This document shows, piece by piece, positions 1,262 through 45,382 of a DNA stretch of 64,000 bases. The stretch is from positions 88,536,001 through 88,600,000 of the forward strand of contig NC_043003.1 of assembly GCF_006345805.1 (NCBI RefSeq), written 5' to 3'. The position numbers were made by a program, and so were the translations under genes. Source of the DNA: Octopus sinensis. Lineage: Eukaryota. The stretch's first letter is position 1. Each line of letters starts with the position of its first letter. The notes beneath the pieces are model-generated. The model was not told where the DNA came from, did not search any database, and saw only the letters and a list, made by a program, of their open reading frames with translations.

Positions 1262-1465
1262 TATATACATGTCTGTATATATACATATATATGTGTGTGT
1301 GCATGTGTATATATGTGTGTATATATATATGTGTGTGTGTGTGTGTGTATATGTGTGTGTATGTGTGTATATATTGATGTGTGTGTGTGTATATGTATAT
1401 AGATGTATGTGTGTGTGTGTATATATATATATATATAGATAGATAGATAGATAGATAGATAGAGA
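1262..1465. repeat. Compound (TA)/(TG)/(TAGA) microsatellite
   Basis: Directly visible. Confidence 0.95.
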
Positions 1466-1639
1466 GAAAAAATAATGAGTGAATGAGAAAAACAACGGAA
1501 GGGTTTAAAAAGCGTCAAAATAACTGGAAATAAAATGAAACAAAATTGAAGCCAAAACATTAAAAATTATTGAAAGTGGGTAGAAATAAACACTACATAG
1601 TGTAGTAGTGCTATGCTAGAGCATCTGTAGAAAGTTCAA

Positions 1640-2060
1640 TGTGATTTCGGAATGGAAAAATTCAGATCGTGGGAGTTTTCTGAAAGTCCTCTCCCCACCT
1701 CAAGATTTTCCCCACAAATTACTTTATAATCGCAATGTATGCTGTTTGAAAAAAAAAACAGACACACATTTTCCTAACAGTTACAAGCAAAAAGCTCAGA
1801 TCTTGTGAATTTTCCTAAGTCTTCTCTCCACTCTCTTGGAAAAGATTTTCCCCACAAATTTCTTTATAATCGTAATGTATGCTGTTTGAAAGGTATTCAT
1901 ATAAAATGTATTTTATATCACATATGAAAAAACCCCATTGTCCTAAAAGTTATGAGGGAAAAACTTGGATCTTGTGAATTTTCTGAGGTCCTCTCCCCAC
2001 CCTACCATCGCTTTGCACACATTTTTTTAAATATTCGTTTCCTATACATTTTTTTACACC
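1640..2060. repeat. Degenerate repeated units related to the foldback element at 5662-5985
   Basis: Recurrent gatcttgtgaattttc..aagtcctctcccc and tttccccacaaat..ctttataatcg motifs, also seen at 5850-5910 and 14340-14520. Confidence 0.6.
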
Positions 2061-2249
2061 CATTGCACTATTTTTTCCTGATTTTCATTTCCAGGTCAAG
2101 TTGTAGACTATATATATTTTTTTTTTAATTTCAACATTAACCATTTATTGTAGTTGTTTGCAAATAGTGGATTAAAACTTGAAATGAAAACATTAAAATA
2201 GAGAGTGAGAGGATTTGGAAATTGGTTCTTTATTAACCACAAAGGGTTG

Positions 2250-2890
2250 ATACATTAATTAAAAATTTATGATAATATATATGAATAACGGATGATCTAA
2301 CAATGATGGAGTGAGAGACAGGTGTGACCCCATGTTTCACCACAGATCCCTTTATGAGGCTTATGTTTTCACTCAAGCAGGCACATTCACTCTCAACATG
2401 CTTGCCACTTTCTTTCATCTTTTCTCATATATACTGAGTGACAAGCGTCTCCTCTCCAACCTTATGGAAAATAAAACAGTTTACCAAACTAAGGCTGGAA
2501 ATGAAGACAACTGTCACCACTCCTTTCATGCGTGTCTTCCATACCACCTCTTTCGCCACAGCCATTACATAGAGAAAACAGACCTTCCCGTCCCTGTTCA
2601 GAGAGGATGTAGAATAATCTTTATTATTGACTTGGTTGACAGTTGTACCCTTCCTAGGCGTGACAGCAGCTGTTTGACATAAACTCACAATTCCGAATCA
2701 GTGGAGGCAAAGATGCCTCTCATTTACTTGACAATTTATGCACCACATTGCAGAAATCCCAACGTAAGTGTATGTCAAAGCAAACTGTTACACTGTTGTA
2801 CCATTGAATTACAAATAATGCTCATCTTGTATGCTCGGGTAACCCTACAGCTTCCAAGAGCACAACTGTATTCGTTTTTGCTTAGATAAA
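2250..2890 (-). mobile_element. Tx1/L1-like non-LTR retrotransposon C-terminal remnant
   Basis: Frameshifted peptides VKQLLSRLGRVQLS, GKVCFLYVMAVAKEVVWKTRMKG and RLERRRLS..EKR*KKVASMLRVN resemble Tx1 ORF2 C-termini. Many stops. Confidence 0.6.
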
Positions 2891-2899
2891 ATGACAAAA

Positions 2900-3659
2900 T
2901 TGTGGGTGTTAAGTCCCCATGGAGGGGTCTTTCTAACTTGTAAGATGATGAAATTTTATAAATATTACTTCATTTGTGTCTAATATCTATGGTTAAAATT
3001 TCGCCAACAGCAAAAATTCATGAATTGTCAATGGGGTTATGGCCCATATGCATAGAATATAATTTTCAAATTTCATAAAAATCCATTCAGTACTTTTGAC
3101 CTAGTTTTGGAACATAAAAGAAATGACTAAAATTTGGGAGCATTAGAGTGATATATATATAGATAGATACATACATACATACACACACACATACAATGAT
3201 AAATTGATAGATACAACTGAGTGGGCAAACAAAAATATTCTATTATTCTATTAGTTTGTTCTTGTGAAACCAGTAAGTTATGGGGATGTAAATAAACGAA
3301 CACCAGTTGAGAAGCAGTGATGAGGGAGAAACAGAAAGGCACAGACATAGACTTACATATATACATACATATATATATATGTATACGATTGATTTCTTTC
3401 AGTTTCTGTCTACAAAATCCACTGACAAGGCTTTGGTTGGTCTGAGGCTATAGCAGAAGACACATGCCAAGTCACCAGACAGTGGGACTGAACTGAGGAC
3501 CATATGTTTTAGAACCAAGTTTGTTACCACACAGCCACACCTGCACCTATGTGTGTGCGTGTCTGGGTGTATATATGTATGCATGTATATATGTGTATAT
3601 ATATATGTGTACATATATATATATATATACGCATCCATATATATATATATATATACATG

Positions 3660-3710
<51 letters not shown>

Positions 3711-4130
3711 GTAAATTTGAATTTAAAATAATAAGGGTGAAAGATTAAATATTAATTTGATTAATATGAATTGAAAACCAGTGGTGTAGCATATAAGACC
3801 ATAGCGGATCTTCTTCTAGCAAAATGGATGTCCACTCTTAATGGTTCAACCCTGTTATATAATAGTTTCACTATTAAACTGAAAGCATCTGACATTACAA
3901 TAGAGAGATGTTTTTCTTTCACTTTTAACACGTAATACTGAAATAGTAGAGAAGATATAATATTGCTGTGGGCTCGCCCTAGGCAAGAAGCTAAAAACAT
4001 TTTTGCCCATGACACTACATGGACCCTAAGTAAGGCATGTGTAAAATTTGAATGAAATTGGTTGTTTAGTTCTCAAGTTTTAGGGATTCACATAGACAGA
4101 CACACATTCTCAGTTTTATATATATATAGA
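2900..4130 (-). mobile_element. Non-autonomous Helitron (3'-truncated) carrying a captured tRNA-SINE
   Basis: 5' end TCTATATATATATAAAACTGAGAATGTGTGTCTG at 4130. Inverted copy of 25336-26390, including the SINE at ~3190-3550. Confidence 0.65.
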
Positions 4131-4235
4131 AGATATATATATATTCACACACACACAAGGTTGTGAACATTTTTAAAAAAGTTATTTCTTCTCAAAGTCG
4201 AAAATGCAGTCTTCATTGTGCACCCCCTGTATATA

Positions 4236-4450
4236 CGAGGGGGGTGCTGAAAAATCCCTGACTTTAAGAGTGTCGCGAAAGGCCTGGATGGCAGCCCAGC
4301 ATTCTGAGTTCTTTTACGGGGCTTAGAAAAACTGAAGGACTGCTGCGGTGTGTAAATCTGAGAGGAGAATGTGTTGCTTAAAATCATAATTAACTGATCC
4401 TCTTGGTATTTTCTTCTACCCCAAACCAGGAACATTTCAGTATCCCCTCG
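4236..4450. mobile_element. Mariner-type MITE
   Basis: TA|CGAGGGGGGTGCTGAAAA left end and TTTCAGTATCCCCTCG right end form imperfect TIRs. Confidence 0.7.
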
Positions 4451-5221
4451 TGTGTGTGTATTCCAAGATGTGATGAGTTCAGAATAAGCTACGTCTGGCC
4501 ACTTAAAACGAGGTGTTCAAAGATAAGTCTGAGAGGGAGTCCTACAAAATATATTTACCCGACTATTGATTATGAAACATTTTTGAAATAGATGTGTGCG
4601 TGTTCAGTTTAAGTTTATAGAATTAGAGAACATTATAACCACCTTCATAGAAAAGCGATGTAGAGAATATAATAAGAAAGTAACGCTTAGCGGCAAGTCG
4701 AGTCCACGTCTCGGTTTGAATAGTTTAAGCCAATTCACTACAATGACGCTGCTAGATTTCGAAAAGGTTCCAAGTTTACACAATCTCACGCAACTGTTGT
4801 CCTTCAACAATAATAAGCCAGTAAAAATGGTTGCATGGTTCTAATGCATGATTGGATGCTATACTCTGCTTATCTCTGTACTCAGCTGTTTACAATTAAA
4901 AAAAAGTGCGGTGTCGATTGAGACATCGATATCAAGTACCTGTAATGTCGTACGAACGATTCAACTGACCATAACTCTCCCCTGCAAAAATTAGCCATAA
5001 CTGTGTTACAAGAAATCACCAAAGCAGCCCTTAGTAATGATGAATATATAAATTATATTTGAGCGAAAATTTAATTAGTTCAAAAGAAAAAAACTTATTG
5101 AGAAATGTATGAAACGAATGCGATAAAAATATCCCATATGATTTGCAAAATTCAGTAATAATAATCACATAACAAGCTTGAATTTAAAGCACCATCGCAC
5201 ATATGATATATCAAACCTTAC

Positions 5222-5317
5222 TTTTTCTTTTTCAGCTTTCTCTGCTTTTAATTTACGCACAATTTCACCTTGTTCTTTGATTGCCTGTTTCACTGCGGCT
5301 TTTTCTTGCTCGGCCAT
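5222..5317 (-). CDS. HARS: First coding exon (WHEP-TRS helix 1) of a probable histidyl-tRNA synthetase; the rest of the gene lies beyond position 1 or was not found
   Basis: Kozak accATGG; MAEQEKAAVKQAIKEQGEIVRKLKAEKAEKEK contains the WHEP motif QG..VR.LK. A phase-0 donor GTAAGG at 5221 lies 15 residues after QG, the intron position I recall for vertebrate HARS1 exon 1. Confidence 0.78.
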
Positions 5318-5520
5318 GGTGATGAGATGAGGGCAACTGAAAGGTCACTTCCGGTAAACGGTGCATTTGATGATGCAATCGGACAGGAAACCGGGAAGCC
5401 CCTGTATATGGGGAGAAGGGGCTTTGCTTACTTTCTTTATGATATTGATAAAATATCAGGATCCCAGTCAAGAATTCGTGTGACGTAAGTGAAATAACGT
5501 TACTATATTTACGGTAAATG
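5318..5520 (-). promoter_or_regulatory. Probable housekeeping promoter / 5' UTR of the HARS-like gene
   Basis: ETS-type ACTTCCGG at 5347-5354 and CRE-like TGACGTAA at 5481-5488. Locally CpG-enriched relative to the flanks. Confidence 0.5.
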
Positions 5521-5661
5521 TTTACATTTGTACCTAACCTAAAACAAGAGTGACACAATTCAGAAGTTGGAATCAATCCGGCGAGAATGCAATTTACAAA
5601 ATTTCGTGTGGGTCGGTTAATATATAGTTTAACTCCCGTTCACCAAATCAAAATTAGAAAC

Positions 5662-5985
5662 ACAGTCAAATAGGTTTTTAAAAAAATGTAGAAAACGAAT
5701 ATGAAAACAAAAATTTGTGCAGACGAACGTGGGGTGAGAGGATCTTCGGAAAATTCACAACATCCGATTTCTCCCTCATAACTTTCAGGAAAATGGATAT
5801 ATGTTGATGAAATGTCATAGATTACTATTATAAAGAAATTTATGGGGAAATGTTTTCCGTAGGGTGGGGAAAGGATTTCGGAAAATCGGATCTTGTGAAT
5901 TTTCCGAAAGTTCCCCCCACGTTCGTCTGCACAAATTTTTGTTTTCATATTCGTTTTCTACATTTTTTTACACCTGTTTGACTGT
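5662..5985. mobile_element. Foldback/MITE-like element with ~110-bp inverted arms
   Basis: 5680-5734 is the reverse complement of 5915-5969; 5746-5770 pairs with 5883-5908. Confidence 0.75.
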
Positions 5986-6519
5986 ATTAGATTGTTAGGT
6001 TAGGTTGTCTGTTTCTCTTGTTATTTAATCGTCCTGGTGTGGCAAAACTATGATCAAATGTGTTCCAGCCAACTTGGTATTTATTTTATTCAGTTCGACT
6101 AGGACAACATAATTCAGCAAATCGTTCAGGCATTATATTTAGGGCGATTTTTATTTTTTTAATATGATGGTGTGGTGAGATTTGGCTACTGTTTGTTGCA
6201 AGCGGAGCGAAACCATGGTAATTAGTTGACGGCATCCAAATGTTCGACCAGATTCCTACGCATGTGTGCACCCCCTTGACTTTGTTTCTGGAGGAGACGT
6301 GGGATAGAGTTACTAAAGAGGTCACAGGATGTGTATTGAAAGAGCTTTAACAAAAAGAAATTAAAATAATAATAAAGTTGAAGTGAAGGCCAAATATATA
6401 GTGCGTGTGTTTAATTAGCAAACAATGACCGTCCCTAAGTATAACAATACCTATCTCAACAGATGATTTCACATCAAGAATCTTGCTAAACAAATGCATG
6501 AATGTGACTGAGATTTATT

Positions 6520-6770
6520 GCAATACACCATGCTTGATAAGAACTGTCAAGCCAAGTGAGATCATAGTCGTGGTGTTTCGTAACTGGCACCCATGCCAAT
6601 GGCACATAAAAAGCACCCACTACACTCTTGGAGTGGTTGGCGTTAGGAAGGGCATCCAGCTTAGAACCCATGACAAATCAGATTGAAACCTGGTACAGCT
6701 CCCTCAGCTTACCAATTTTCAGTCAAACCATCCAAGATGGTAAACAGATGTTAAATGATGATATATTAGA
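6520..6770 (+). mobile_element. RTE-tail SINE-like repeat
   Basis: Same GGAGTGGTTGGCGTTAGGAAGGGCATCCAGC motif and atgatgat tail. Confidence 0.7.
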
Positions 6771-6779
6771 TAAAGATGG

Positions 6780-7370
6780 TTATAGGGGTTATCTAAGGCT
6801 TCGCATCCGTAAAGTACTTAGCTCTTCAGACCAAAATAGCCACTGGCCTATAACCCCTATTCAAAGTGGGGGGAGAAGACTAGTTGTTGAAAACAGACAA
6901 AGGAGAAGGGTTAAATGCAAGGGATTGTCTCCCTTAGACCACTATCTGTAGTGGACCCGGTCAGTCTGTGGGTTCCAGGATTTCAGCAGCAATCTCATGA
7001 AGTGTAAATAGGATCTGAAGACTTCCATCCTTGAATTTAAGATGTTCTCCGAGTTGATGAACTTCTTTAATATACTTGCCCATTCAGCTAAGCACAGCTT
7101 GCAACACTTGTTCCCGTTGATGTAAGGGTCTGGTTTTTCTAGGATCTTCCATGAGATTACCTGTGGAGTCCCTTTGTCCTTCAGGTGCCACACATGGCTG
7201 GCCAAGGACATGGCACATTGTCTCTCTCGGATCTGTTGTTGGAGAGGCGCTGCTTGAAGGTGTTTCCGGAACATCTCGTGTATCTTTGAATACTGCTGCT
7301 TCTGTTGTTGGTTTTGTTAATGCTGGTGTGGGACGTCCTCCCACGCCAGCATTATGACGTCTAGAATGGG
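6780..7370 (-). mobile_element. Penelope-like element 3' remnant (GIY-YIG C-terminus)
   Basis: SLASHVWHLKDKGTPQVISWKILEK...CKLCLAE is a typical PLE endonuclease tail. Confidence 0.7.
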
Positions 7371-7435
7371 GGTAAAATGAGTAACGACTAATTTCAGTTA
7401 TTTCTTCTCTTTAACTACACGGTGTGTAAATATAG

Positions 7436-7797
7436 TGGAGGCACAATGGCCCAGTGGTTAGGGCAGCGGACTCGCGGTTTCGATTCCCAGACCGGGCGTT
7501 GTGAGTGTTTATTGAGCGAAAACACCTAAAGTTCCACGAGGCAGGGATGGTGGTGATCCCTGCTGTACTCTTTCACCACAACTTTCTCTCATTCTTACTT
7601 CCTGTTTCTGTTGTACCTGTATTTCAAAGGGCCGGCCTTGTCACTCTCTGTGTCACGCTGAATATCCCCGAGAACTACGTTGAGGGTACACGTGTCTGTG
7701 GAGTGCTCAGCCACTTACACGTTAATTTCACGAGCAAGCTGTTCGGATCAACCAGAATTCTCGTCGTCGTAACCGACGGAGTGCTTCCATCCATTGT
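7436..7797 (+). mobile_element. tRNA-derived SINE
   Basis: A-box TGGCCCAGTGG and B-box GGTTTCGATTCCC; same family as 22178, 48398 and 48661. Confidence 0.85.
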
Positions 7798-8459
7798 GTA
7801 AATATATCATGAAGGGGACACTCCAGCAGATTGTGAAGAAGCTATAGAGAATATTCTATGTTGAATTTTTTTTTTTTAATCGAGTTTCATTGATTGCATA
7901 TCATGTGCCATTTTCCCCTGATCCTCTTTCATTTGACCTAGGTGTTTAAAATTTATTTTGCATTTCTAATGTTTAGGGATGGATACTGACGAGTTTCAGT
8001 GTCTTTTCAAATGTGATTCTAGAGAATTGAAGTGGCAAATATATATTATCTTGTCTTACTCATTTTGCCCCACCCAAATTTGTCTATTATATGTTGAAAG
8101 AGAACAACGATAATTTTCTGAAATAGTGATCATATTATGTTAAAATACTTTCAAGGCATTTAGGGAAGGCCTTTTGCTTAGCTGATATAGTTTTTGGAAG
8201 GTTATGAACATTTATAAAAAATATATATTTCGTGCCAAGGTAAAAAATGCAGTAAAAACATTCCATTTTGCAACCCCACTCCACATATATGCATACATTT
8301 TTTGTTTTTAAGGAAATATTCTTTTATTGGAACATAACACGTATGTATATGATACATGTATAATGCAAAAATCGCATTAAAAATGCGAATCCAAATCCAG
8401 GGGGAAAACAATGGAAAAAGAGGAACAAAGAAAGAAAAAAGAAAAGAAAAAACACCAAT

Positions 8460-9170
8460 GCAACACCAAGTGCCTCAATTGGTTGCACACCCGAAGTTCA
8501 ACATGCTTGCAGCATTACCATGGTTGATGGTAAGCCAAAGGTGTTGGGACAGCCAAGCACCTGCATTGGCATCGCCTGACGTCTCAGTGAGGCAAGCTGC
8601 CAACAATGACAAGAACTTTGCCATTAGTGGCCCAGCCCATTCAAACGTCTCAAACACTACAGGCTGGAAAAAATGGTTCACTGACAAGTCCCAGTACTTC
8701 AGAATTTTGTTTTGTTTGGCTACAGAAGCAGTGATTCTCCCATTTACTACAGCATCTAGACACCTATATCTTACCTGGGGACAAAGGGTAAGGACCATCT
8801 GATCTCTTCCCATCACTTCTGCATTATCCCACCAGCTTCAAAACTGAGGGGATATTAACCCATGCCAGGGCCTGCTTAATGATTAAGTTTATCTTGGTGT
8901 GACAAGCAAAGCAAGCAGTGTTTTAGGCAGTAAGACAAACCATGAAAACCTGCTGAGTTGTGGAGCCTACAACATGAACATCTCAGTTCCCCACAGACGT
9001 CAGCTCCCATTCTGAGTGCTATGGAGATGCAGAGCTCATCTAGACTGAGTAGACCATCAATGTTAGCCACAGGCAGGGCATCAATCCAGTCCCTTGAGAA
9101 TTTTACATTAGCAGAAGGCAACATCTTGAAAATTGATCAAAGAGAGAGTTGAAAGTGGAACTGAGTGCAG
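8460..9170 (-). mobile_element. CRE-like non-LTR retrotransposon remnant (zinc knuckle and restriction-like endonuclease)
   Basis: CSCCRLHNSAGFHGLSYC knuckle; K.LKYWDL..FQPVVFETFEWAGP...QHLWLTINHGNAASML matches the RLE C-terminal QRGNAA motif. Confidence 0.7.
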
Positions 9171-9299
9171 ATTGTCCCATACTCTCTGCTCCGTCTATCC
9201 TCAACTGTATGTATATGTGCAAACAGAAAGAAAGCAAAGACGGAAAATTTTCAGACAATGAATATTTAAGTATAGGTATGTAGATTACAATATCTTCAC

Positions 9300-10400
9300 A
9301 TCTTTTTCCTTCTGTAGATTCTCTTTCTTTCCTTTATTCCATATTTAATATCCCCCCACCTAGATCATAACTAATAGAATATCCTCTCGGCTGCAACACA
9401 CTAATAATTAATAGAACACTACTCAGCATCTCTCTTGATGGTTTGGAACTATATACGAATTACTAAAATGCATATAATTAATCAATCTTTTCAATTCTCT
9501 TCACTCATTTATTTAATATATTTAGTTCCTTCATTCTTGAGCCCTACAATTTCACTATATCTATATGTCCCTAATCTATTTATTTTTGATTTACCATTTT
9601 AAATCTTTATTTGATTTATCATTTTAAATCTTTATTTTTATCCCTCAGTTCCCAATGAGCATACATTTCATTAACACCACAAATTTTTATATTTTATATT
9701 CAGTATTATGGGCATTTACTTCTAGCATCACTACAACCAGTCCCAAATCTCCCCTCACTTCCATTATTATCGGGCTCCCTTTAGCATGAGATCATTATCT
9801 TTTACAACTACTTTTTTACAATCACTACCTTATCCCTCCCATTTTTGCTAACCCTGGCCAGCCTTGATGGTCATTTGATATGTTATTCTTCATCCCTTTT
9901 CCTGTCTCTATACATGCACTCGCTAACCTCTCTCGACTTGCATACCCCACTATACTGACTGCTATATATTTACTCTACTACATCCACCTGTCTTTCCTCC
10001 TGACTATAGTATAATATCCCTATTCTACTCTCATTCATTCTCTATTTAAAACTGGTACAGGTAACTTTCACTATTCCTCACCATGGATTATCATCGAATA
10101 TTCTCATTTGAAGCTGCTGTTGGATATTACCTATAACTGTATTCTTCATTTGATCATGGATCTACCTAACATATCCTTCCCCCAATTTTGACAAACTGAA
10201 CTACTCTAATATCATCGATTGAGGACTTACCCTCACTTTTACATCTCTCTGATGACAGTATACTCAGCCTATGAAATCCTTACTCAGTATGATGATCCAC
10301 ACACTTGGCTATTCTAGAAACAACTGCACGAGACTCTATATTCTATATATTCTCTATCTAAATTAAATGTCTTTTTCAAGTGATCCCAAACGGTTTGCCT
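9300..10400 (+). mobile_element. Pyrimidine-rich PLE pLTR-like remnant with a degenerate hammerhead motif
   Basis: tctCTGATGAcag at ~10249 ... ctaGAAACAACTGCAcgagac at ~10317-10335; same layout as 21902-21957. Confidence 0.4.
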
Positions 10401-10829
10401 TTTCATTTTTACTTTAATCTTTATCTACCTGCTCAAGGAAAAAAACCACCTATAGCCACTTCTGATAGGCAGTTTTAACATCACATGTTCAGTTGCAGTT
10501 CAAACTGGAGTTTTAGTGGTAAACCAAACAGCACTCATAGTACATACCTTATATATAGATATTCATATATTAATAGATCAAACTTACACAGAGCACAAAT
10601 GACAGAGAATATTAAAGGGGTAGAGATAAGGTGTTATAAATCCAACAGCTTATAACACCTTACATCTGTTATATTTAATTTGTTTATCTGCGTAATTGCT
10701 TCTCTCTCTCCATTTATACATGTATATAGTTGGTGATACACACAGAAAGATAGAACTTAAAACACGAGTAAATATTTTTTATTAAAAATAGACAACACAT
10801 ATATATGTATATGTATTATAATTATTATA

Positions 10830-11400
10830 CACACTGTGATGTGCCAGATGCATTTTTCAAGGAGAGGTGTGAAACTGCATGAAAAAATTTACTCTTGTCT
10901 ATCTCCACAACTATTGGTTGCCCATAAGCATCAATGACCCCAATTTGCATTGGATTTTGTTTGAGCCAAACATCATATATTTCTCAACAGAAATTACTCC
11001 AATCTATGATCGCAGTTTTGGGCACAGGTAAAGAATACGCACACCACCCATTTTCGGCATAACCCTAACTCTAAACACCAGGTGTGCATATTCTTTACCT
11101 TCGCCTTACTTTGTATAGAAGATTCATGCATATCATTTTGTGACATATCACGTGACTAACAATAAATGATTAAAAAGATGCTATACAGGGACACGTGGCT
11201 TTTGTCAAAGAATGACCCATGACGGATTGATTTTCACATTTTACAAAGTTTGCGGTACCAAACTTTCCCGTCAATAATGTCACCACATGGTGAATTGCAA
11301 TAACAATTGAAGAATGTTGTCTTGTCTCGTGATTCTACCAATTTAGTAATATTCCATGATTCTTCAGCATAACTACAGATTTCTGCCCCACTCATTTTGG
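10830..11400 (-). mobile_element. Merlin (IS1016-like) transposase remnant
   Basis: DGKVWYRKLCKM*KSIRHGSFFDKSHVSL and IGVIDAYGQPIVVEIDKSKFF match the Merlin SIR.GSFF and VEIDESKF motifs. Confidence 0.7.
11026..11100. repeat. 20-bp inverted repeat enclosing TAACCCTAACTCTAA, interrupting the Merlin remnant
   Basis: AGGTAAAGAATACGCACACC ... GGTGTGCATATTCTTTACCT. Confidence 0.75.
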
Positions 11401-12261
11401 ATGATCAGAGCTTTCAGGAAAAAAAAAAAAAAAAAAAATTTATTAACTTTCAATTTTTCAAAAGAAATTTTTTTCTTTTTTGGAAATTCATATTTTGAAA
11501 GTTGATCTTTGATTTGGGTGTTGTTTCTAGCTTGTCGGACTTTCTGGTAGGAGTGTACTTAATTGAAGATTTTGAAAACGTAATTCATTTAGCTGCTGTT
11601 TCTAGCATGTCGAATTTTCTGTTTAGATACTTTTTACATCTGCTATTTTAGTATAATTCTACGCATGCATGAAACAGTAGAGAAAACACTTTAATTTTAC
11701 TTTCTGTCATAGATGTGCAGGCAGGGATAGAAGTATTCATTTTTTTTTTATTTTAAATTTTACAAAATTTTTTTTCATAATCATAATCCCTGTATTTTTG
11801 TACATATTTCGTCCCCCACCACCAAAAAACCAAAAGGGGGTCCATGTCCTTTAACTCTGCCAAATTTTTTTTAATTGTAGCATTTAAATACAAAGAAACA
11901 GAAAAAGAGAGATAAAAAAGAAAAGAACGGGGTGGGTTAAAGCAGTATGCATAACTACATCAAAATATTTTTAAGGATAATTTGAAAAACTTTAAGTGGT
12001 TGGAAGAAATTTTACAAGATCCATTAACCCTATGCTTTTATTTTAACACTTTTTCTAAAGCTCCTTTTAAATACTTTCATTTAACAACATTGTCGTTGAT
12101 TGAATGTTTAATTGCAACTTATACTTCTGCTTTCTCATATTTTAGTTTCTTGTACTTTTTTATTAATTTATTTGTGGGGTGGTAATATATATTTTATTCA
12201 AAATATGAAAAAGAATATATTTTACAAAAGGAAAACAAAAAAAAAGGGAGGAAAAAACATT

Positions 12262-12830
12262 AATGCAGCACCAAGTGCCTCAATTGGTTGCACACTACAA
12301 AGTTCATGGAACCTACTGAAGCAAGTCTGTATGCTTGTGGCATTACCACGGGCGATGGCAAGGCTTAAGGCATTGGAGAAGCCAAGCACCCTCATGGGCA
12401 TCACCTGACATTTCAGTGAGGCGAGCTGCCAATGATAACTAGAACTTCACCGTTAGTGGCCTAATTCCTCCAAATGTCTCAAATGCCACAGGCTGGAAGA
12501 GATAGTTCACTGCCACATTACGATACTTCAGGGTTTTGTTAAATTTGGTTACAGAAGCAGCGACCCTCCCATTTACTGCATCATCCAGGATGTAGGCAGG
12601 AGCGAAAGAATCACAGATTATGGTGTCCTAGACGAGGCACCTACCTTTTACTCAGGGACAGAGGTTAAGACCATATAGTCTCTTCTCATCACTTCTGAAT
12701 AATCCTGCAAGCTCCAAAACTGAGGAGATATTAATCCAAGTCAGGCCCACTTAATGAATAAGTTTAGCTCAGTGTGATGAGTGAAACAACCAACATTTAG
12801 GCGGTAAGACAGACCGTTTCTTTGTTTCCT
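12262..12830 (-). mobile_element. Second CRE-like RLE remnant
   Basis: Diverged paralogue of 8460-9050 sharing the 3' end caccaagtgcctcaattggttgcac; IARGNATSI motif. Confidence 0.7.
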
Positions 12831-13163
12831 TCTATCTTCTTTCTAACAGACATCAAATGTTTCACACTAACATCAGTGAACATGCTATGATGCAAATTTC
12901 ACACTCTGCCTCCCAATTTGCTGCAAACCCCTTATTTTTGTTCAGAAAAAGGGTGGGTAGGAAACTGGACCACCCCCATCCCAGAATCATTGGGTAAGTT
13001 GATTTTTTTTTTTCGTTGAATGAATTATGGTGACCTCCTAATATGCCATAAAACTCTTTTTGGGGTCTGGAAAACGGGGTGGTGTGGAATCCTCGGAAAT
13101 TTCACCCCCTCCCCCTTTTCAAATATTTTTTTGCTGTTTCTTTACCCATATTTTTAGATAACA

Positions 13164-14303
13164 TTTTGCAGAAATACGTTTTCAAGTGAGTGTGGATTAC
13201 ATTAGATTGAAAATTCAAAGAAGTTTGAAATGCAGTGAAAATGCAGAGGTTAAGGAAGTTAGTGGTAACAAAGTTTGTGGAACGATAAAGAATAAATAAT
13301 TCATCTAAAAAAACACACTAGAGTTTGTGTGTGTGTGTGAAACAAGTAAAGGTACAATATTAAAACAAAATATCTTTTTCCTACCTCTTAAAATCACTGG
13401 ATATAATATGTATAATATATAATAATCCCAGATTGCAGAATACATTTGAAAAACTAAAGCACTTTTCCTTTGCAATTTTTGGCGCTGAAATCGGGCAAGG
13501 CTTCCACTGCACTCCACACATTCTTCTTACCCCCAACTAGGCTTATACTTTAAAACATTCAATACAGATTTTCCTACACCCATTAGGCTTGTTAACTTAC
13601 TTATTGGTAACTGAGAGATCTTGTAGTAATTAACCGAAAATATTAAAAAAGAAAATTATCAGACAGTCATGAGATATGCTAAATCACCCTTAACTTTTTT
13701 CTATAGTGAAACCATATTCAACACTATATTTATGAATTTGTTTCTCTCACCATGATACATGAGATCTTTTTAAAAACCTTTTTCTATTACTCAAACAAAA
13801 AAAATATATATCCAAGATTTTTCTATTTTAACCAAGTTCTCTGAAAAAACTTGATCTTTTATGACTGCAATATTGCAACGTTAAACAAGACAAACAATTG
13901 TTACCAGATGCACCCAACTTGTTGCTAATGTCTTAATACCATAACTCAATAAAAGAAAACTATCAGACAGGCAATTAAAAGGCCAAATGAAATTGTACAT
14001 AACTCAGAAACATAGACTTCTGAAAAGCATTAAAAAGCAAAGAAATTTAATAGTCATACATATGGTAATTCCCTGAATTCCAGCTTTTGCAGAAATACGT
14101 TTTCAAGAGAGTGTGGATTACATTAGATTGAAAATTCAAAGAAGTTTGAAATGAATAAGTGAAAATGCAGAGGTTAAGGAAGTTAGTGGTAAAAAAGTTT
14201 GTGGAAAGATAAAGAATAAATAATTCATCTAAAAAAACACACTAGAGTTTGTGTGTGTGTGTGAAACAAGTAAAGGTACAATATTAAAACAAAATATCTT
14301 TTC
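13164..14303 (+). repeat. Direct duplication of ~217 bp (13164-13380 and 14085-14303)
   Basis: Near-identical ttttgcagaaatacg...caaaatatctttt copies. Confidence 0.9.
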
Positions 14304-15158
14304 ACGCAAAAAAATAGTCTATAAATTTCTTACTCTTCAAAAGTCCTCTTCCCACCCCGTCAGTAAAATTTTCCTCAGAAATTTCTTTATAACCGTAATG
14401 TATGCTGTGTGAAAGGTATTTATATAAAATTTCATCAAAAGATATCCATTTTCCTCAAAGTTATGAGGGAAAAATATCAGACCTTGTGAATTTTCCGAAA
14501 GTCCTCTCCCCACCCTCCTTTGCTTTGCATGCTTTTTTTTTTTCTGGGTCAATAAATTAAGTACCAGACAAGTACTGGAGTTGATGTGGTCAACTTACCC
14601 CCCACCACCACCACCATCACCAGATTTCAGGCCCTGTCCCTACAGTTTAAAGGATTATTATTATTATTATTATTATTTCCTGATACTTTCATTGCTATTA
14701 TACATGAGTGTTCCTGAAATATCTCTATTATTTGTTTCATATATTTGTTATCAGTGATAAATTTTTAGCACCATTTCCTGTGATATTCATGCCTCTCTCA
14801 ACAGTAACATCTATATAAAGGTATATTCATTTGACAGAAGAATTGTCTACAAATCCGTTAAATATTCCAGGAAATTTGCCAAAATTCATAAAGCCGGAAT
14901 TCAGGGAATTACCATATGTATGACTATTAAATTTCTTTGCTTTTTAATGCTTTTCAGAAGTCTTTGTTTCTGAGTTATGTACAATTTCATTTTGGCCTTT
15001 TAATTGCCTGTCTGATAGTTTTCTTTTATTGAGTTATGGTATTAAGACATTAGCAACAAGTTGGGTGCATCTGGTAACAATTGTTTGTCTTGTTTAACGT
15101 TGCAATATTGCAGTCATAAAAGATCAAGTTTTTTCAGAGAACTTGATTAAAATAGAAA
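13820..15158. repeat. Near-perfect ~270-bp inverted duplication (13820-14088 and 14889-15158)
   Basis: Reverse-complement identity read directly, with few mismatches. Confidence 0.9.
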
Positions 15159-15274
15159 TATGCAGTAATCTATCCATGCATTGCTGAAAATTTAAATAAG
15201 GCATATTTTACTACAAAAAGGCATTGGACTAATTGTCATTAGTGTTATTTCTTAATCTGTGGACATCAGTGTTA

Positions 15275-15530
15275 TCATCATCATTGTTTAACGTCCACTT
15301 TCCATGCTGGCATGGGTTGGATGGCTTGATTGAGGACTGGTGAGCCAGATAGCTGCACCAGGCTCCAATCTGATCTGTGAGAGTTTCTACAGCTGGATGC
15401 CCTTCCTAATGCCAACCACTCCAAGAGTGTACTGGGTGCTTTTACATGCCACCAGCACAAGGGCCAGTCAGGTGGTACTGGCAACAGCAATGCTCAAATG
15501 GTGTTTTTTTATGTGCCACCTGCACAGGAA
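15275..15530 (-). mobile_element. RTE-tail SINE-like repeat
   Basis: catcatcat tail followed by the reverse complement of the UTR motifs. Confidence 0.8.
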
Positions 15531-15544
15531 ATAATAATAATATA

Positions 15545-16140
15545 TCCTTCTGTTGTAGGCACAAGGCCTGAAATTTTTTTTGGGGGGGGGGTGTCGATCA
15601 CATCAACCCCAGTACTTGACTGGTACTTAATTTATCGACCCTGAAAATATGAAAGGCAAAGTCGACCTTGGCAGAATTTGGGGTTAAGAGGCTAATCAAT
15701 TACAACTTTAGTGCTCAACTGGTACTTATTTTATAGCCCCTATATGGATGAAATGAAAAACAAAATTGGCATCAGCAGAATTTGAACTCCAAATAAAAAG
15801 ACAAATGAAATACTGCTAATTATTTTTATCCGTCATACTAATGATTCTGCCAGCTCACAGCCTCAATAATAATAAAAATAAATAATAATGATTATAAGAT
15901 AGTAATTATTATTATTAAGGCAGTGAACTGGCAGAATCCTTAACACAATGGACGAAATGTTTAGCTGTATTTCATCTGCTGCTACAGATACATTCTGACT
16001 TCCGATTCCACCGCAGTCGACTTTGTCTTTCATCCTTTCGGGGTCAATAAACTAGGTACCAGTGAAACACCAGGCTTGATGTAATCAACTAGTCCCCTCC
16101 CCCAAAATTTCAAGGCCTTGTGCCTTCAGTGGAAAGGATT
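15545..16140. mobile_element. Cluster of tRNA-SINEs with a GTCGACTTTG..TTTCATCCTTTCGGGGTC core (one + copy at ~15915-16140, - copies at 15545-15880)
   Basis: Core motif on both strands; (TTA)n tails. Confidence 0.65.
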
Positions 16141-16167
16141 ATTATTATTTTTATTATTATTATTATT

Positions 16168-16730
16168 ATTGAGTGAGAGAGCAGTGCATGCCATCAAAGT
16201 GACACTGGGGTAAAATATATGAAGCCCAGTATACCCGTCTGATAAAGGTACCCTAGGCACATGCATCACAACCATATGTGCACAACATGGTGATCTCATA
16301 TCAAGATAAACAGCACATGACCTTGCAGTTGGGGGCCCAGTTAGAATTTTCTTCTGGTTGAGTAACCCATCCCGCTCAAAAGGTCCCTGAATAAGGGTTG
16401 TTTAAGGATGTTGAACAAAACACCCATGTTTCCAGAGGTGAATTATTCAAACCCCAAAGAATACCTCTCAACACATGGCTATGATGCTGCTCGTGATCAG
16501 AGATGCACTACTTCTGCTCGTGATCAGAGATGTACATATCGTCAGCCACTAAGGGACATGCTCAACTGGTTAAGGTCAAACAACTGACAAGCAAATCTGT
16601 GGTTTTGAGCAGAATATTTGCTGTAGCCCATCTTTTATACCAAGACAAAACAATGTACATAACAACACTTCCAATCAGTTAAGATCAGCAGCCATGAGAG
16701 CCACTGCCTGGTACTGCATCAGGGCATTTG
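16168..16730 (-). mobile_element. Unclassified interspersed repeat flanked by (TTA)n
   Basis: Complex non-coding block between two (TTA)n tracts; assignment as a repeat is by context only. Confidence 0.4.
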
Positions 16731-16764
<34 letters not shown>

Positions 16765-17088
16765 AGCTCAACAGGGGGATTCAAATTCATCTGAGTTTGA
16801 CTTGCATCCTTTTTCAATAAGTACCAGTCAAGAACTGGGGTCATTGTAATTGACTTGCCTCCTCCCCTCAAAATTACTGACCTTTTGTCAAAATTACAGA
16901 ATTATTATTGATATTCTTATTATTTTGTATTAATTTGAGGATGAATGGTCCGTGAATATTAAATATCACTTAAGATTGGAAAAATTCGTAAATCACAATC
17001 ACAATTACACAATAATCTAGAGCTAAAAGTATTATATTATCACATACACACACACATATATAAATTCATTAAAAAAAAAAGACCTTAC

Positions 17089-17184
17089 TTTTTCTTCTCT
17101 GGCATTCTTTCTTTCTAATTGTTGCAAAAATTCAGTTTGGTCTTGCACTGCCTTTTCAAGAGCTGCAATCTCTTCTTCAGCCAT
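17089..17184 (-). CDS. Diverged paralogue of the WHEP first exon (candidate alternative first exon of the HARS-like gene)
   Basis: acaATGG start; MAEEEIAALEKAVQDQTEFLQQLERKNAREEK is 32 codons with 13/32 identity to 5222-5317, and has the same phase-0 GTAAGG donor at 17088. Confidence 0.7.
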
Positions 17185-17269
17185 TGTTGCTTAATAGTTA
17201 GTAATGATCACACGCTAATATATATAGCTTTATGGTTTTTAATGATGCAATATAGGCTGAGAGAAGTCT

Positions 17270-17385
17270 GAGTGAGGTGGGTAACAATTCCAAGAAAAGA
17301 TGATGTAATCAGGACACCCTTTAAAATGAGTGAAGTGGGTAACAATTCCAAGAAAAGATGATGTAATCAGGACACCTATTAAAAT
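17270..17385. repeat. Two-copy ~55-bp tandem repeat
   Basis: gagtga.gtgggtaacaattccaagaaaagatgatgtaatcaggacacc x2. Confidence 0.85.
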
Positions 17386-20339: not shown

Positions 20340-20690
20340 AATCATCATCATCATCATCATCGTTTAACGTTCGTTTTCCGTGCTAGCACGGGTTGGACAG
20401 TTTGACCGGGGTCTGGGAAGCCAGGAGGCTGCACCAGGCTCCAGTCTGATCTGGCATTGTTTCTACAGGTAGATGCCCTTCCTAACGCCAACCACTCTGT
20501 GAGTATAGTGGGTGCTTTTTTCGTGCCGCCGGCACAGGTGCCAGGGAGCTGGCAGCGGCCACAATCGGTTGGTGCTTTTTACGTGCCACCGGCACAGAAG
20601 CCAGTCAAGGCGGCACTGCAATCGGCCACGTTCGGATGGTGCTTTTTACGTGCTGAAAGGAAGCAGCAGAAAATAACTACCACACTCTTA
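20340..20690 (-). mobile_element. RTE-tail SINE-like repeat
   Basis: (CAT)n tail plus reverse-complement UTR motifs. Confidence 0.8.
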
Positions 20691-38800: not shown

Positions 38801-38809
38801 GGAGTTCAT

Positions 38810-39750: not shown

Positions 39751-39754
39751 TACA

Positions 39755-41310: not shown

Positions 41311-41324
41311 TTCTTCTGTTCATT

Positions 41325-44557: not shown

Positions 44558-45382
44558 ATGATAACCTCAAATTGTCAATGGCTTACCAGAAGTAGGTCAT
44601 TTGCAGTTTATATAATACGTTATCATTCTTCTATCAAGAACCCAGAAAATTTAATTTACATTCTACCAGACACTAACCTAGAGAAGATACCATTTATAAC
44701 TCAATATCAACAAGTCTTTGATTTATCAAAATTCAACATTCCAAACTTAAAACAGACTTCAGCCAAACAGCGCAGACCAGAACTAAAAGTAGCAGACTCT
44801 CGCCTATTCTACACACCACAGTTGGCTCTTTCTTTTAATAATAATACTAGGCAATTAGATATTCAGTATTCAATACTGAGAAAAATATTTGAGATCATTT
44901 CTTTAATTTACCATAAGAGTCCATTGTTGTTGTTAGACATTGGCTGTGGTACAGGTGTAAGTACTGAAAGTTTCACTTCAAATAATTGCCATTTTATTGG
45001 CACTGACATTAGTATGTCAATGCTATCTATGGCTGTGAAAAAGAAGTCTTTGAAGAGTTGTGATTACCTCCAACTTGACCATAGTTACAGACTTCCCTTT
45101 CGCCCAAATTGTTTTGATGTTGTCATCAGTACTTCATTTTTACAGTGGTTATTAGTTACAAAAGATTCAAAATGCATTTTAGGAAGATTTTATTCTTTTG
45201 TTTCTCACATTTTAAAACCCAATGGACATTTTTTGCTCCAGTTCTATCCAAGGAACATTTCAGATATTCAGCTAGCCTTGACCTTATCTGTAGAGGTTTT
45301 CCGAGGAGCCTTGTTCTCTTGCAGACCACACCCTAAACGAGGACTGAAACTTTTCTTATTTCTCTATAAAGAAGATAAATAA
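44558..45382 (+). CDS. BUD23: Divergent, intronless BUD23/WBSCR22-family SAM-dependent (m7G rRNA) methyltransferase with an N-terminal extension
   Basis: RRPE..LFY, TRQLDIQ, LLDIGCGTG.S, GTDIS..ML, LPFRPNCFD..IS.SFLQWL and QFYPRN align in order with the BUD23 MTase domain. First in-frame ATG at 44558; strong acceptor at 44450; AATAAA at 45381-45386. Probably a paralogue rather than the orthologue. Confidence 0.8.
   Translation: MITSNCQWLTRSRSFAVYIIRYHSSIKNPENLIYILPDTNLEKIPFITQYQQVFDLSKFNIPNLKQTSAKQRRPELKVADSRLFYTPQLALSFNNNTRQLDIQYSILRKIFEIISLIYHKSPLLLLDIGCGTGVSTESFTSNNCHFIGTDISMSMLSMAVKKKSLKSCDYLQLDHSYRLPFRPNCFDVVISTSFLQWLLVTKDSKCILGRFYSFVSHILKPNGHFLLQFYPRNISDIQLALTLSVEVFRGALFSCRPHPKRGLKLFLFLYKEDK

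What the first reader, a model, noticed from the sequence alone, without database searches (positions are those of the whole stretch)
5222..17184. Duplicated and charge-reversed WHEP first exon: two alternative N-termini for an aminoacyl-tRNA synthetase
Seen: two - strand exons (5222-5317 and 17089-17184), each exactly 32 codons from a good-context ATG to a phase-0 GTAAGG donor, with 13/32 identity. The proximal exon keeps the WHEP QG..VR.LK motif (net charge about +2). The distal exon changes it to QT..LQ.LE (net about -4) but keeps length, frame and donor. I found no HARS catalytic exons (for example LKTPKG) between them, so the distal exon is more likely an alternative first exon splicing over >17 kb than a separate gene. 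Known: WHEP basic residues bind RNA and mediate non-canonical synthetase functions, and the HARS WHEP is the Jo-1 epitope. Inference: a promoter-switched isoform with an acidic, RNA-binding-deficient WHEP, possibly tissue-specific.
Basis: partly seen in the sequence, partly recalled or inferred. Interest (0 to 1): 0.75.

Follow-up and report, generated by a model that had tools for sequence, protein, structure and literature searches.

The report
Octopus HisRS duplicated first-exon modules
Upstream of the normal first exon of the octopus histidyl-tRNA synthetase gene lie three extra copies of that exon with its promoter; two are dead, but one is intact and has replaced its conserved basic residues with neutral or acidic ones, so it may give the enzyme a second N-terminus, although no transcript evidence could be obtained here.

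Summary
Both 32-codon minus-strand exons exist as described and are true paralogues. The window is Octopus sinensis chromosome DNA.

The proximal exon (5222-5317) is exon 1 of the histidyl-tRNA synthetase (HARS) gene. Orthologous exons in other animals are followed by full HisRS exons, and a divergent methyltransferase neighbour is conserved. All other HARS exons lie beyond the window's left end.

New findings:
- The duplicated unit is a module: an ATF4-type CARE element (ATTGCATCAT), the promoter, exon 1 and about 130 nt of intron.
- The module occurs four times: canonical, distal, and two dead copies at 14.8-15.1 kb (-) and 13.9-14.1 kb (+).
- The dead copies lost the ATG, reading frame, donor and CARE. 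The distal copy, their sister, changed at about the same nucleotide rate yet kept all four, plus its hydrophobic helix face.
- The distal copy lost 8 of the 9 basic residues of the proximal exon.

The best reading (about 0.6) is an alternative, CARE-bearing first exon that swaps helix 1 of the WHEP domain. This is not shown. There is no transcript, no annotation and no orthologue of the distal exon. Nucleotide divergence is near neutral, so a lucky relic remains a real rival. It would be a new variant of a known kind, of moderate interest.

The parts
5222..5317 (-). Canonical HARS (HisRS) exon 1 coding part: Met plus the first half (helix 1) of the WHEP domain, 32 codons, ending in phase 0
   Evidence: WHEP-TRS E 3.2e-7. 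It is 96% identical in the related octopod contig L001. Orthologous exons in L004 and L005 are followed by HisRS exons. More than 70 orthologous read-through ORFs from other animals were recovered.
5216..5221 (-). Splice donor GTAAGG of canonical exon 1
   Evidence: The intron position is shared by all orthologues, in which the read-through ORF continues with V (from GT).
5370..5379 (-). CARE/AARE-type element ATTGCATCAT (reverse complement TGATGCAAT), 62 nt upstream of the ATG
   Evidence: It is conserved in L001 and L002. It fits the consensus TGATGxAAx and matches the functional human SARS CARE TGATGCAAT described in PMC5175342.
5346..5354 (-). ETS-type motif CCGGAAGTG in the proximal core promoter
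   Evidence: It is identical in L001 and L002, and CCGGAAGT is also present upstream of exon 1 in L003 and L004. Assigning it to ETS factors is from general knowledge.
4972..5215 (-). Conserved intronic element directly after exon 1
   Evidence: It is 88-98% identical to L001 in 50-nt bins, against 70-85% further away. Its first ~130 nt are still alignable to the distal copy.
17089..17184 (-). Distal, intact paralogue of exon 1: 32 codons, ATG in good context, open frame, phase-0 end. Hydrophobic positions are kept and 8 of 9 basic residues are replaced (net charge -4)
17083..17088 (-). Splice donor GTAAGG of the distal exon. The 15-nt junction AAGAAAAAGTAAGGT is identical to the canonical one
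17242..17251 (-). CARE element ATTGCATCAT of the distal copy, 67 nt upstream of its ATG
   Evidence: The 10-mer occurs 3 times in the window against 0.4 expected, and the third occurrence lies inside a retrotransposon ORF.
17269..17384 (-). Two 58-bp tandem repeat units, each carrying a CARE-consensus site TGATGTAAT (17301-17309 and 17359-17367), in exact 58-bp register with the distal CARE
17216..17226 (-). TATA-like TATATATATTA where the proximal and dead copies have the ETS-type motif
   Evidence: Its function is inferred only.
16930..17082 (-). Start of the distal intron, homologous to the canonical intron start
   Evidence: 61% identity over 119 aligned columns with 4 gap events, including poly-T and (TG)n insertions.
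14833..15111 (-). Dead copy 1 of the module: ATG changed to ATA (15035-15037), four in-frame stops, indels (-3, +5, +1), donor GT changed to GC (14935-14940), CARE changed to ATTGCAACGT (15097-15106)
   Evidence: (E 4e-57).
13867..14088 (+). Dead copy 2 of the module: a recent inverted duplicate of dead copy 1
   Evidence: 272 bp at 98.2% identity (13817-14087 against 14890-15161) (at E 4e-44, 74, 75).
44558..45382 (+). Intronless class I SAM-dependent methyltransferase gene, the conserved divergent neighbour that marks the upstream limit of the HARS 5' region
   Evidence: Pfam Methyltransf_11 at E 2.8e-15. It is an annotated gene in the O. sinensis and O. vulgaris assemblies. Its homologue lies head-to-head 1.4 kb from HARS exon 1 in L005.

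Best explanation
In the octopus lineage, the 5' module of the single-copy HisRS (HARS) gene was duplicated locally several times. The module consists of a CARE enhancer, the core promoter, exon 1 and the start of intron 1. It now lies in the enlarged gap between HARS and its divergent methyltransferase neighbour. One duplicate lineage died and left the two dead copies.

Its sister, the distal copy at 17089-17184, most likely survives as an alternative first exon with its own promoter. That promoter keeps the CARE, has two extra CARE-consensus sites in a 58-bp repeat, and has a TATA-like element where the ancestral promoter has an ETS-type motif. Transcripts starting there would splice from the unchanged phase-0 GTAAGG donor, over more than 17 kb, to HARS exon 2, which lies outside the window.

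The product would be a HisRS in which only helix 1 of the N-terminal WHEP helix-turn-helix is exchanged. The hydrophobic face that should pack on helix 2 is kept. The conserved basic surface (K14, R21, K22, K24, K27, K30) and G17 are replaced, turning net charge from +2 to -4.

Shown: paralogy, gene identity, module structure, the dead sister copies, and the intactness of the distal copy.
Inferred: transcription, splicing to exon 2, ATF4-type control, and altered RNA or partner binding.
For: Gene identity:
- Orthologous first exons in L004 and L005 are followed by exon 2 (ITEEVAKLLALKAQLG..KKFVLKTPK) and, in L004, by the whole HisRS body (tblastn down to 3e-30).
- The divergent methyltransferase neighbour is conserved.

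Paralogy of a whole module:
- Exon E 4e-11 and profile E 5e-63.
- The shared CARE 10-mer sits at -62 and -67.
- Intron homology is visible.

Internal control:
- The dead copies share 10 derived exon substitutions with the distal copy, so they are sister lineages.
- The dead copies lost the ATG, frame (3 indels, 4 stops), donor and CARE.
- The distal copy, with a similar number of private substitutions (14 against 17), has 0 indels and 0 stops, and keeps ATG, GT and a 10/10 CARE.

Neutral simulations:
- ATG, open frame and GT are all kept in 3.4% of runs.
- At the indel rate of its own intron, no indel is expected in 4% of cases and no frameshift in 12%.
- Among intact runs, a second-codon-position count as low as observed occurs in 3%, and all six hydrophobic positions stay hydrophobic in 20%.

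Pattern of change:
- All six strongly hydrophobic positions change conservatively or not at all (V9L, I13V, I19F, V20L, L23, M1).
- Both peptides are amphipathic with similar hydrophobic faces (shuffle P 0.01).
- On the distal branch, codon changes are 15 non-synonymous to 1 synonymous, and 11 of 19 nt changes are at first codon positions. These give K-to-E/Q and hydrophobic-to-hydrophobic swaps without ever creating TAA.

Background: 16 of 20 cytoplasmic synthetase genes in mammals are ATF4-induced through CAREs of this consensus (PMC5175342).

No other exon-like partner (exon 2-like or catalytic) lies between 17088 and 5318.
Against: - No transcript, cap site or gene model could be obtained, so use of the 17088 donor is untested.
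- At nucleotide level the distal exon (67% identity to the canonical exon) is no better conserved than the adjacent intron (61%). It has changed about as fast as its dead sister.
- dN/dS against the canonical exon is 0.5-0.7, compared with 0.07 between orthologues. Classical purifying selection is therefore not demonstrated, and the branch tests rest on very few sites.
- Pfam does not recognise the distal exon as WHEP.
- Several invariant residues (G17, R21, K24, K27) were already lost in the common ancestor of the distal and dead copies. This fits early relaxation as well as it fits new function.
- No distal-like ORF was found in the protein collection, nor among the best 120 hits of the exon-1 profile search, all of which keep QG..VRKLK.
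- No second copy occurs within 6-10 kb upstream in three more distant species.
- The region is evidently prone to local duplication, which raises the prior for a relic.
Confidence: 0.6

Rival explanations
1. The distal copy is an unused relic. It is a dead duplicate of the promoter and exon 1 module, like the two dead copies, that by luck has not yet suffered a stop, an indel, or loss of its ATG or donor. The canonical exon is the only first exon with a WHEP half.
For: - The nucleotide divergence of the distal exon equals that of neighbouring intron and of the dead sister copy.
- dN/dS is 0.5-0.7.
- All invariant basic WHEP residues are lost and there is no Pfam match.
- The region carries other dead copies, so duplication followed by decay is the local norm.
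- No homologue of the distal peptide was found anywhere.
Against: - The joint chance of keeping ATG, open frame and GT is about 3%. Multiplied by 4-12% for no indel or frameshift, this gives about 0.1-0.4%.
- The CARE is 10/10 intact, while the dead copy changed 2 of 10 positions.
- The 15-nt exon-donor junction is identical.
- Second codon positions and all hydrophobic positions are spared.
- Seven first-position changes in K/Q/E codons never produced TAA.
Confidence: 0.27
2. The distal module is active DNA but does not code. Its CARE cluster acts as a distal ATF4-type enhancer, or as the start of an enhancer or upstream non-coding RNA, for the canonical HARS promoter or for the divergent methyltransferase. 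The donor is kept only because a 5' splice site near a start site favours productive transcription.
For: - Three CARE-consensus sites lie in 58-bp register upstream of the distal exon.
- Mammalian synthetase genes can use CAREs away from the start site that recruit Pol II without producing the mRNA (PMC5175342).
- An annotated multi-exon plus-strand gene starts somewhere left of 34558.
Against: An enhancer or non-coding role does not explain the retained ATG in Kozak context, the open 32-codon frame of unchanged length, or the codon-position and hydrophobicity pattern.
Confidence: 0.11
3. The similarity is chance resemblance between two lysine/glutamate-rich helical ORFs.
For: Both peptides are of low complexity. 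'MAE' starts and GTAAG donors are common.
Against: - The score gap is 70 against 29 among 27,477 windows.
- DNA-level E values are 4e-11 and 5e-63.
- The shared CARE sits at the same offset, and collinear intron homology is present.
- Intermediate dead copies link the two.
Confidence: 0.01

Closest known systems
Canonical metazoan HARS exon 1 and WHEP-TRS domain (Pfam PF00458)
   Same: - Same position (N-terminus).
- Same length and same intron position and phase as in the fish, insect-like, mollusc-like and other orthologues recovered.
- The proximal exon is a plain member.
- The distal exon keeps the helix-forming, amphipathic pattern.
   Different: The distal exon lacks the QG..VR.LK signature and 9 of the 16 positions that are invariant in the 7 aligned orthologues. 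None of the roughly 120 listed homologues shows such a variant.
Single-gene HARS with alternative 5' exons for cytoplasmic and mitochondrial forms (zebrafish hars, PMC5608375; predicted for invertebrates)
   Same: One HARS gene yields proteins that differ only at the N-terminus through alternative use of 5' exons. Exon 1 carries the start of the WHEP domain.
   Different: In zebrafish the alternative is an unrelated cassette exon with a mitochondrial presequence and a second ATG. Here the alternative would be a duplicated, diverged copy of exon 1 with its own promoter. It is acidic, so it is not a presequence.
Arrays of duplicated variable first exons, each with its own promoter, spliced to common exons (UGT1A, clustered protocadherins), and tandem exon duplication as a source of alternative exons (from general knowledge, not checked here)
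   Same: - Promoter and first exon are duplicated together.
- The phase and donor are conserved.
- Dead members lie among live ones (birth and death).
   Different: Here there are only two potentially live members. The exon codes half of a small helix-turn-helix rather than a whole domain. Usage is unproven.
ATF4/CARE control of aminoacyl-tRNA synthetase genes (PMC5175342)
   Same: The element is identical to the functional human SARS CARE (TGATGCAAT) and fits TGATGxAAx. It is promoter-proximal, as in CARS-type genes.
   Different: ATF4 binding in a mollusc is untested. The element was not found upstream of exon 1 in L003 or L005. L004 has only a consensus-type TGATGTAAT 261 nt upstream of its ATG. 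The promoter-proximal element therefore looks like an octopod-lineage acquisition.
Human HARS splice variants that redeploy the WHEP domain (WHEP-only and catalytic-domain-deleted forms; cited in PMC7646482, ref. 26)
   Same: Isoform diversity centred on the N-terminal WHEP domain of HisRS, which is linked to non-canonical roles.
   Different: Those variants keep the canonical WHEP and drop other domains. The octopus variant would keep the enzyme and alter the WHEP itself.

Membership tests
HARS (HisRS) gene, exon 1: proximal exon | Orthology to a first exon that is spliced to HisRS exon 2 and the catalytic exons | tested here: met
   It is 69-75% identical to the first exons in L003-L005. L004 and L005 carry exon 2, and L004 carries the full HisRS body downstream. 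The methyltransferase neighbour is conserved. The window's own exon 2 lies outside the window.
WHEP-TRS domain (PF00458): proximal exon | Match to the family profile, including the QG..VR.LK signature | tested here: met
   E 3.2e-7 at 30.7 bits, on profile positions 2-23 of 53. It falls below the 32.5-bit gathering score only because half a domain is encoded. The signature is present.
WHEP-TRS domain (PF00458): distal exon | Match to the family profile, including the QG..VR.LK signature | tested here: not met
   There is no WHEP hit at E up to 10. The signature reads QT..LQ.LE. Nine of the 16 positions invariant in orthologues are changed. Descent from a WHEP exon is nevertheless shown.
WHEP-TRS domain: distal exon | Forms helix 1 of a helix-turn-helix packed on helix 2 (encoded by exon 2) | not testable with these tools
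   Exon 2 of this gene is outside the window, and chimeric sequences are not accepted by the structure tool. Only indirect support exists: hydrophobic positions are kept, and the peptide is amphipathic with a hydrophobic face within 45 degrees of the canonical one.
Alternative first exon of HARS: distal exon | Sequence requirements: own start codon, open frame, and the same phase and a functional-looking donor as the canonical exon | tested here: met
Alternative first exon of HARS: distal exon | Own transcription start, and splicing to the common exon 2 | not testable with these tools
   No transcript data are available, and the gene table for this part of the chromosome could not be reached. 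Only promoter-like motifs are seen: the CARE, a TATA-like element, and no upstream ATG.
Alternative first exon of HARS: distal exon | Evolutionary constraint as coding sequence | tested here: inconclusive
   For: intactness is unlikely under neutrality (about 0.1-0.4%), and the sister copy is dead. Against: the nucleotide rate is about neutral, and dN/dS is 0.5-0.7 on 32 codons. No orthologue was available.
[quoted passage not shown] | Sequence fits TGATGxAAx close to the start of a synthetase gene | tested here: met
   TGATGCAAT at 5371-5379 and 17243-17251, and TGATGTAAT at 17301-17309 and 17359-17367. The consensus is from PMC5175342.
[quoted passage not shown] | ATF4 binding and induction on amino-acid limitation | not testable with these tools
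   This needs ChIP or reporter assays.

The most novel reading that the evidence does not exclude
Octopods evolved, by duplication of the promoter and exon 1 module and rapid, possibly adaptive, charge-changing substitution, a stress-inducible (ATF4/CARE-driven, TATA-type promoter) HisRS isoform. Its WHEP helix 1 has lost the ancestral basic surface. This natural 'WHEP-swapped' synthetase would have altered tRNA or partner binding, or a non-canonical role, and could form heterodimers with the canonical subunit.
Probability: 0.25. Interest if true: 0.7.

Novelty: new variant of a known kind. Interest (0 to 1): 0.5.

Why it matters
The WHEP domain is the metazoan add-on through which several synthetases gained functions outside translation. 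In human HisRS it is an autoantigenic and signalling-active part of the protein. All of the roughly 120 animal HARS first exons listed here keep the same basic motif.

A naturally occurring isoform that keeps the enzyme but rewrites that motif would be a ready-made experiment on what the HisRS WHEP surface does. It would also be a clean example of how duplicating a promoter together with its first exon creates N-terminal protein diversity, because dead sister copies sit alongside it as an internal control.

If the exon is unused, the locus is still a neat record of birth and death of first-exon modules, but only of local interest.

Tried and rejected
- **Exon 2 or any HisRS/TrpRS exon in the window.** Only the canonical exon 1 hit. 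The recalled HARS query was good enough to find every exon in L004.
- **Protein-collection search with the proximal exon.** It found only one read-through ORF from a related octopod.
- **Protein-collection search with the distal exon.** It found nothing. This negative result is weak, because the same word index missed obvious relatives that the exhaustive search later found.
- **Finding the octopus HARS protein or gene model.** It was not among the profile hits. The methyltransferase look-up gave the chromosome and two annotated genes, but its 10-kb flank stops at 34558. An attempt to reconstruct the neighbouring 87-aa gene as a two-exon model, in order to walk leftwards, gave no candidate.
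- **Argument that the flanks are randomised while the exon is conserved.** Global alignments of the spacer, intron and upstream region looked no better than shuffles. A more sensitive search showed real intron homology at 61-68%, so I withdrew this argument.
- **A mitochondrial-presequence exon in intron 1.** A crude scan found nothing convincing.
- **Pfam on the largest ORFs between the exons.** No domains were found, so there is no sign of another gene. About 31% of the interval is repeated elsewhere in the window.
- **Rfam and tRNA scans of the window.** Nothing was found.
- **CpG or GC island at either promoter.** None is evident.
- **Structure prediction of the two WHEP variants.** Not run. 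Exon 2 is unknown for this gene, and chimeras are not accepted by the tool.

Full report
**Observation**

On the minus strand, 5222-5317 reads MAEQEKAAVKQAIKEQGEIVRKLKAEKAEKEK and 17089-17184 reads MAEEEIAALEKAVQDQTEFLQQLERKNAREEK. Each starts at an ATG with A at -3 and G at +4, and each is followed by GTAAGG in phase 0. Identity is 13/32 residues and 64/96 nt, with net charge +2 against -4.

The resemblance is not chance. Among all 27,477 open 32-codon windows of the window, the distal exon scores 70 against the proximal one and the next best scores 29. At DNA level the pair gives E = 4e-11 over 106 ungapped nt. Pfam recognises the proximal exon as the first half of a WHEP-TRS domain (E 3.2e-7) but does not recognise the distal exon.

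**Source and gene**

A methyltransferase ORF of the window (44558-45382, +) is an annotated gene in two NCBI assemblies. The window is 100% identical to Octopus sinensis CM016865.1 (about 88,536,001-88,600,000) and 99.1% identical to O. vulgaris.

No HisRS or TrpRS exon other than the proximal first exon occurs anywhere in the window. The rest of the gene therefore lies beyond the left end, and intron 1 is longer than 5.2 kb.

The gene's identity comes from relatives. An exhaustive protein search and a profile search recovered more than a hundred read-through ORFs of the same first exon from many animals. All have M-A-x... QG[ED].VRKLKA.KA.K... followed by V, which is the GT of the same intron.

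- On contig L004, the orthologous exon is followed by exon 2 (ITEEVAKLLALKAQLG..KKFVLKTPK) and by all further HisRS exons (tblastn down to 3e-30).
- On L005, exon 2 lies 9.5 kb downstream.
- In L005, an intronless methyltransferase lies head-to-head 1.4 kb upstream of exon 1. The window's methyltransferase is its homologue (30% identity, E 4e-35).

The proximal exon is therefore HARS exon 1. Both exons sit in the expanded, transposon-filled gap between HARS and its ancestral divergent neighbour.

**What was duplicated**

Aligning the two regions with the related octopod contigs L001 and L002 (roughly 79-84% identical to the window overall) shows a shared upstream 10-mer, ATTGCATCAT. It lies 62 nt before the proximal ATG and 67 nt before the distal ATG, and is conserved in L001 and L002. 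The 10-mer occurs three times in the window against 0.4 expected, and the third occurrence lies inside a retrotransposon ORF.

[quoted passage not shown] It fits the consensus TGATGxAAx and equals the functional CARE of human SARS. Sixteen of 20 mammalian cytoplasmic synthetase genes are ATF4-induced through such elements (PMC5175342).

Upstream of the distal CARE, a 58-bp tandem repeat (95% identity) adds two more consensus sites (TGATGTAAT) in exact 58-bp register.

The two promoters differ between the CARE and the ATG. The proximal one has a conserved ETS-type CCGGAAGTG. The distal one has TATATATATTA at that place.

Downstream, homology continues about 130 nt into the intron (61% over 119 columns, 4 gap events). 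In the canonical copy, this intron start is a strongly conserved element, 88-98% identical to L001. The last 8 exon nt plus GTAAGGT are identical in both copies.

**Two more copies**

A profile of the module finds four hits in the window:
- the canonical copy;
- the distal copy (E 5e-63);
- a copy at 14833-15111 (-), E 4e-57;
- a copy at 13867-14088 (+), E 4e-44.

The last two are a recent 272-bp inverted duplicate pair, 98.2% identical. They are dead. The ATG has become ATA. There are four in-frame stops and indels of -3, +5 and +1. The donor GT has become GC, and the CARE has become ATTGCAACGT.

They share 10 derived exon substitutions with the distal copy, including changes at G17, R21, K24, A25, E26 and K27. 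They are therefore its sister lineage. No extra copy is seen within 6-10 kb upstream of exon 1 in the three more distant species.

**Is the distal exon alive?**

*Against a simple 'conserved exon' argument:*
- Its nucleotide identity to the canonical exon (67%) is about that of the adjacent intron (61%).
- It has about as many private substitutions as its dead sister (14 against 17).
- dN/dS against the canonical exon is 0.5-0.7, while the canonical exon has 0.07 between species.

*For function:*
- After 29-32 substitutions the distal copy has no stop, no indel, an intact ATG and donor, and a 10/10 CARE. The sister lost all of these.
- In neutral simulations, ATG, open frame and GT all survive in 3.4% of runs. 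At the indel rate of its own intron, no indel is expected in 4% of cases (no frameshift in 12%). Jointly this is about 0.1-0.4%.
- Among intact simulated sequences, a second-codon-position count as low as observed (5 changes) occurs in 3%. Retention of all six hydrophobic positions occurs in 20%.
- On the distal branch, parsimony gives 15 non-synonymous against 1 synonymous codon change, and 11 of 19 nt changes fall at first codon positions. The changes are either hydrophobic-to-hydrophobic (V9L, I13V, I19F, V20L) or charge-changing (K10E, K14Q, K22Q, K30E, Q4E, Q11K, E29R, T25R). None created TAA.
- Both peptides are amphipathic, with hydrophobic faces 45 degrees apart (shuffle P 0.01). The proximal peptide has a strong positive charge vector, which is gone in the distal peptide.

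The pattern is that of a helix kept for packing while its surface is rewritten. The numbers are small, and some of the criteria were chosen after seeing the data.

**Most likely mechanism**

The distal module is most likely an alternative promoter plus first exon of HARS. A transcript starting some tens of nt upstream of 17184 would use the unchanged phase-0 donor at 17088 and skip the dead copies and the canonical exon. The canonical exon has no good in-frame acceptor. The only nearby AG, 19 nt before its ATG, would shift the frame into a stop (read directly). The transcript would then join exon 2 in frame.

The protein would be HisRS with helix 1 of the WHEP helix-turn-helix exchanged. Compared with the 16 positions invariant in the 7 aligned orthologues, it keeps M1, A2, A12, Q16, E18, L23 and A28. 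It changes K14, G17, V20, R21, K22, K24, A25, K27 and K30.

The CARE cluster suggests induction by the amino-acid or integrated stress response. The replacement of the ETS-type motif by a TATA-like one suggests a different promoter class. All steps from transcription onwards are inference. I put this reading at about 0.6.

**Rivals**

1. A relic that is intact by luck (about 0.27). It fits the near-neutral rate and the loss of every family-defining residue, but is strained by the joint retention of four independent features next to a sister that lost them all.
2. A non-coding role for the CARE cluster, as an enhancer or as the start of a non-coding RNA (about 0.1). It does not explain the retained ATG, frame and codon pattern.
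3. Chance similarity, which is excluded.

**Comparison with known systems**

- The proximal exon is an ordinary member of the HARS exon 1 / WHEP family.
- The distal exon descends from that family but fails its profile and signature. I therefore do not file it as a WHEP domain, only as a WHEP-derived helix.
- Single-gene HARS with alternative 5' exons is known. In zebrafish an unrelated cassette exon gives the mitochondrial form (PMC5608375).
- Duplicated variable first exons with their own promoters are known from UGT1A and the protocadherins (general knowledge).
- WHEP-centred splice variants of human HARS are known (cited in PMC7646482).
- A duplicated, charge-altered exon 1 of HARS was not seen in any of the roughly 120 homologues listed. 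If used, this is a new variant of a known kind.

**Limits**

- The collection evidently lacks octopus transcripts and the canonical HARS N-terminus.
- The negative result for the distal exon is weak.
- The only close relative available (L001 and L002) covers just 1.3 kb around the canonical exon.
- Expression and cross-species conservation of the distal exon remain untested. Both can be settled quickly with public octopus RNA-seq, gene models and genomes.

Noticed in passing
window 1-64000: The window is 100% identical to Octopus sinensis GCA_006345805.1 chromosome CM016865.1 (about 88,536,001-88,600,000). It is 99.1% identical to O. vulgaris OX597820.1 over the 20.8 kb compared.
   Followed up: yes
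window 44558-45382 (+); L005 7668-8558 (-): An intronless class I SAM-dependent methyltransferase (Pfam Methyltransf_11) with BUD23/WBSCR22-like motifs by eye. It is annotated in both octopus assemblies. It is the conserved divergent neighbour of HARS: 1.4 kb away in L005, and 27-39 kb away in octopus after LINE and SINE insertions.
   Followed up: partly
window <34558-44466 (+): The annotation holds an 87-aa multi-exon gene on the plus strand. Its tiny last coding exon (..YVIC*) ends 92 nt before the methyltransferase ATG. It may represent upstream exons of the methyltransferase transcript, or a divergent transcript from the HARS promoter region. Its start could not be located.
   Followed up: partly
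window 17269-17384: A 58-bp tandem repeat (95% identical), each unit with TGATGTAAT, in exact 58-bp register with the distal CARE. This gives three CARE-consensus sites, about 65, 123 and 181 nt upstream of the distal ATG. It recalls tandem CARE repeats in stress-gene promoters (from memory).
   Followed up: partly
window 4972-5215 (-): The first ~250 nt of HARS intron 1 are 88-98% identical to the related octopod contig, more conserved than the surrounding non-coding DNA. This is a conserved intronic element of unknown role.
   Followed up: no
window 13164-13378 / 14085-14302 and 13817-14087 / 14890-15161: A patchwork of recent local duplications (96.8% direct, 98.2% inverted) surrounds the dead exon copies. 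This part of the HARS upstream region is structurally unstable.
   Followed up: partly
window 203-790, 6583-6766, 15273-15530, 20341-20653, 29539-30002, 40938-41311, 56710-57050 and others: A short interspersed repeat, whose frames read ..LDALPNANHS.SVVGAFYVPPA.., is present in about 9-12 copies. Retrotransposon reverse-transcriptase fragments lie at about 36.7-40.2 kb and 47.7-51.7 kb. About 36% of the window is repeated within itself.
   Followed up: no
window 1-5221 (-): No exon with a mitochondrial presequence was recognised in the part of intron 1 inside the window. A single-gene HARS would be expected to have one, as zebrafish does. The collection's 'longest product' for octopus HARS starts with neither the proximal nor the distal exon, if it is present at all. 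This hints at a third N-terminus elsewhere.
   Followed up: partly
proximal exon, codons 2, 9, 15 and 28: At all four sites where the O. sinensis canonical exon differs from the related octopod (L001), the L001 codon is identical or closer to the distal one. The O. sinensis states (including E15) therefore look derived, and D15 looks ancestral.
   Followed up: yes
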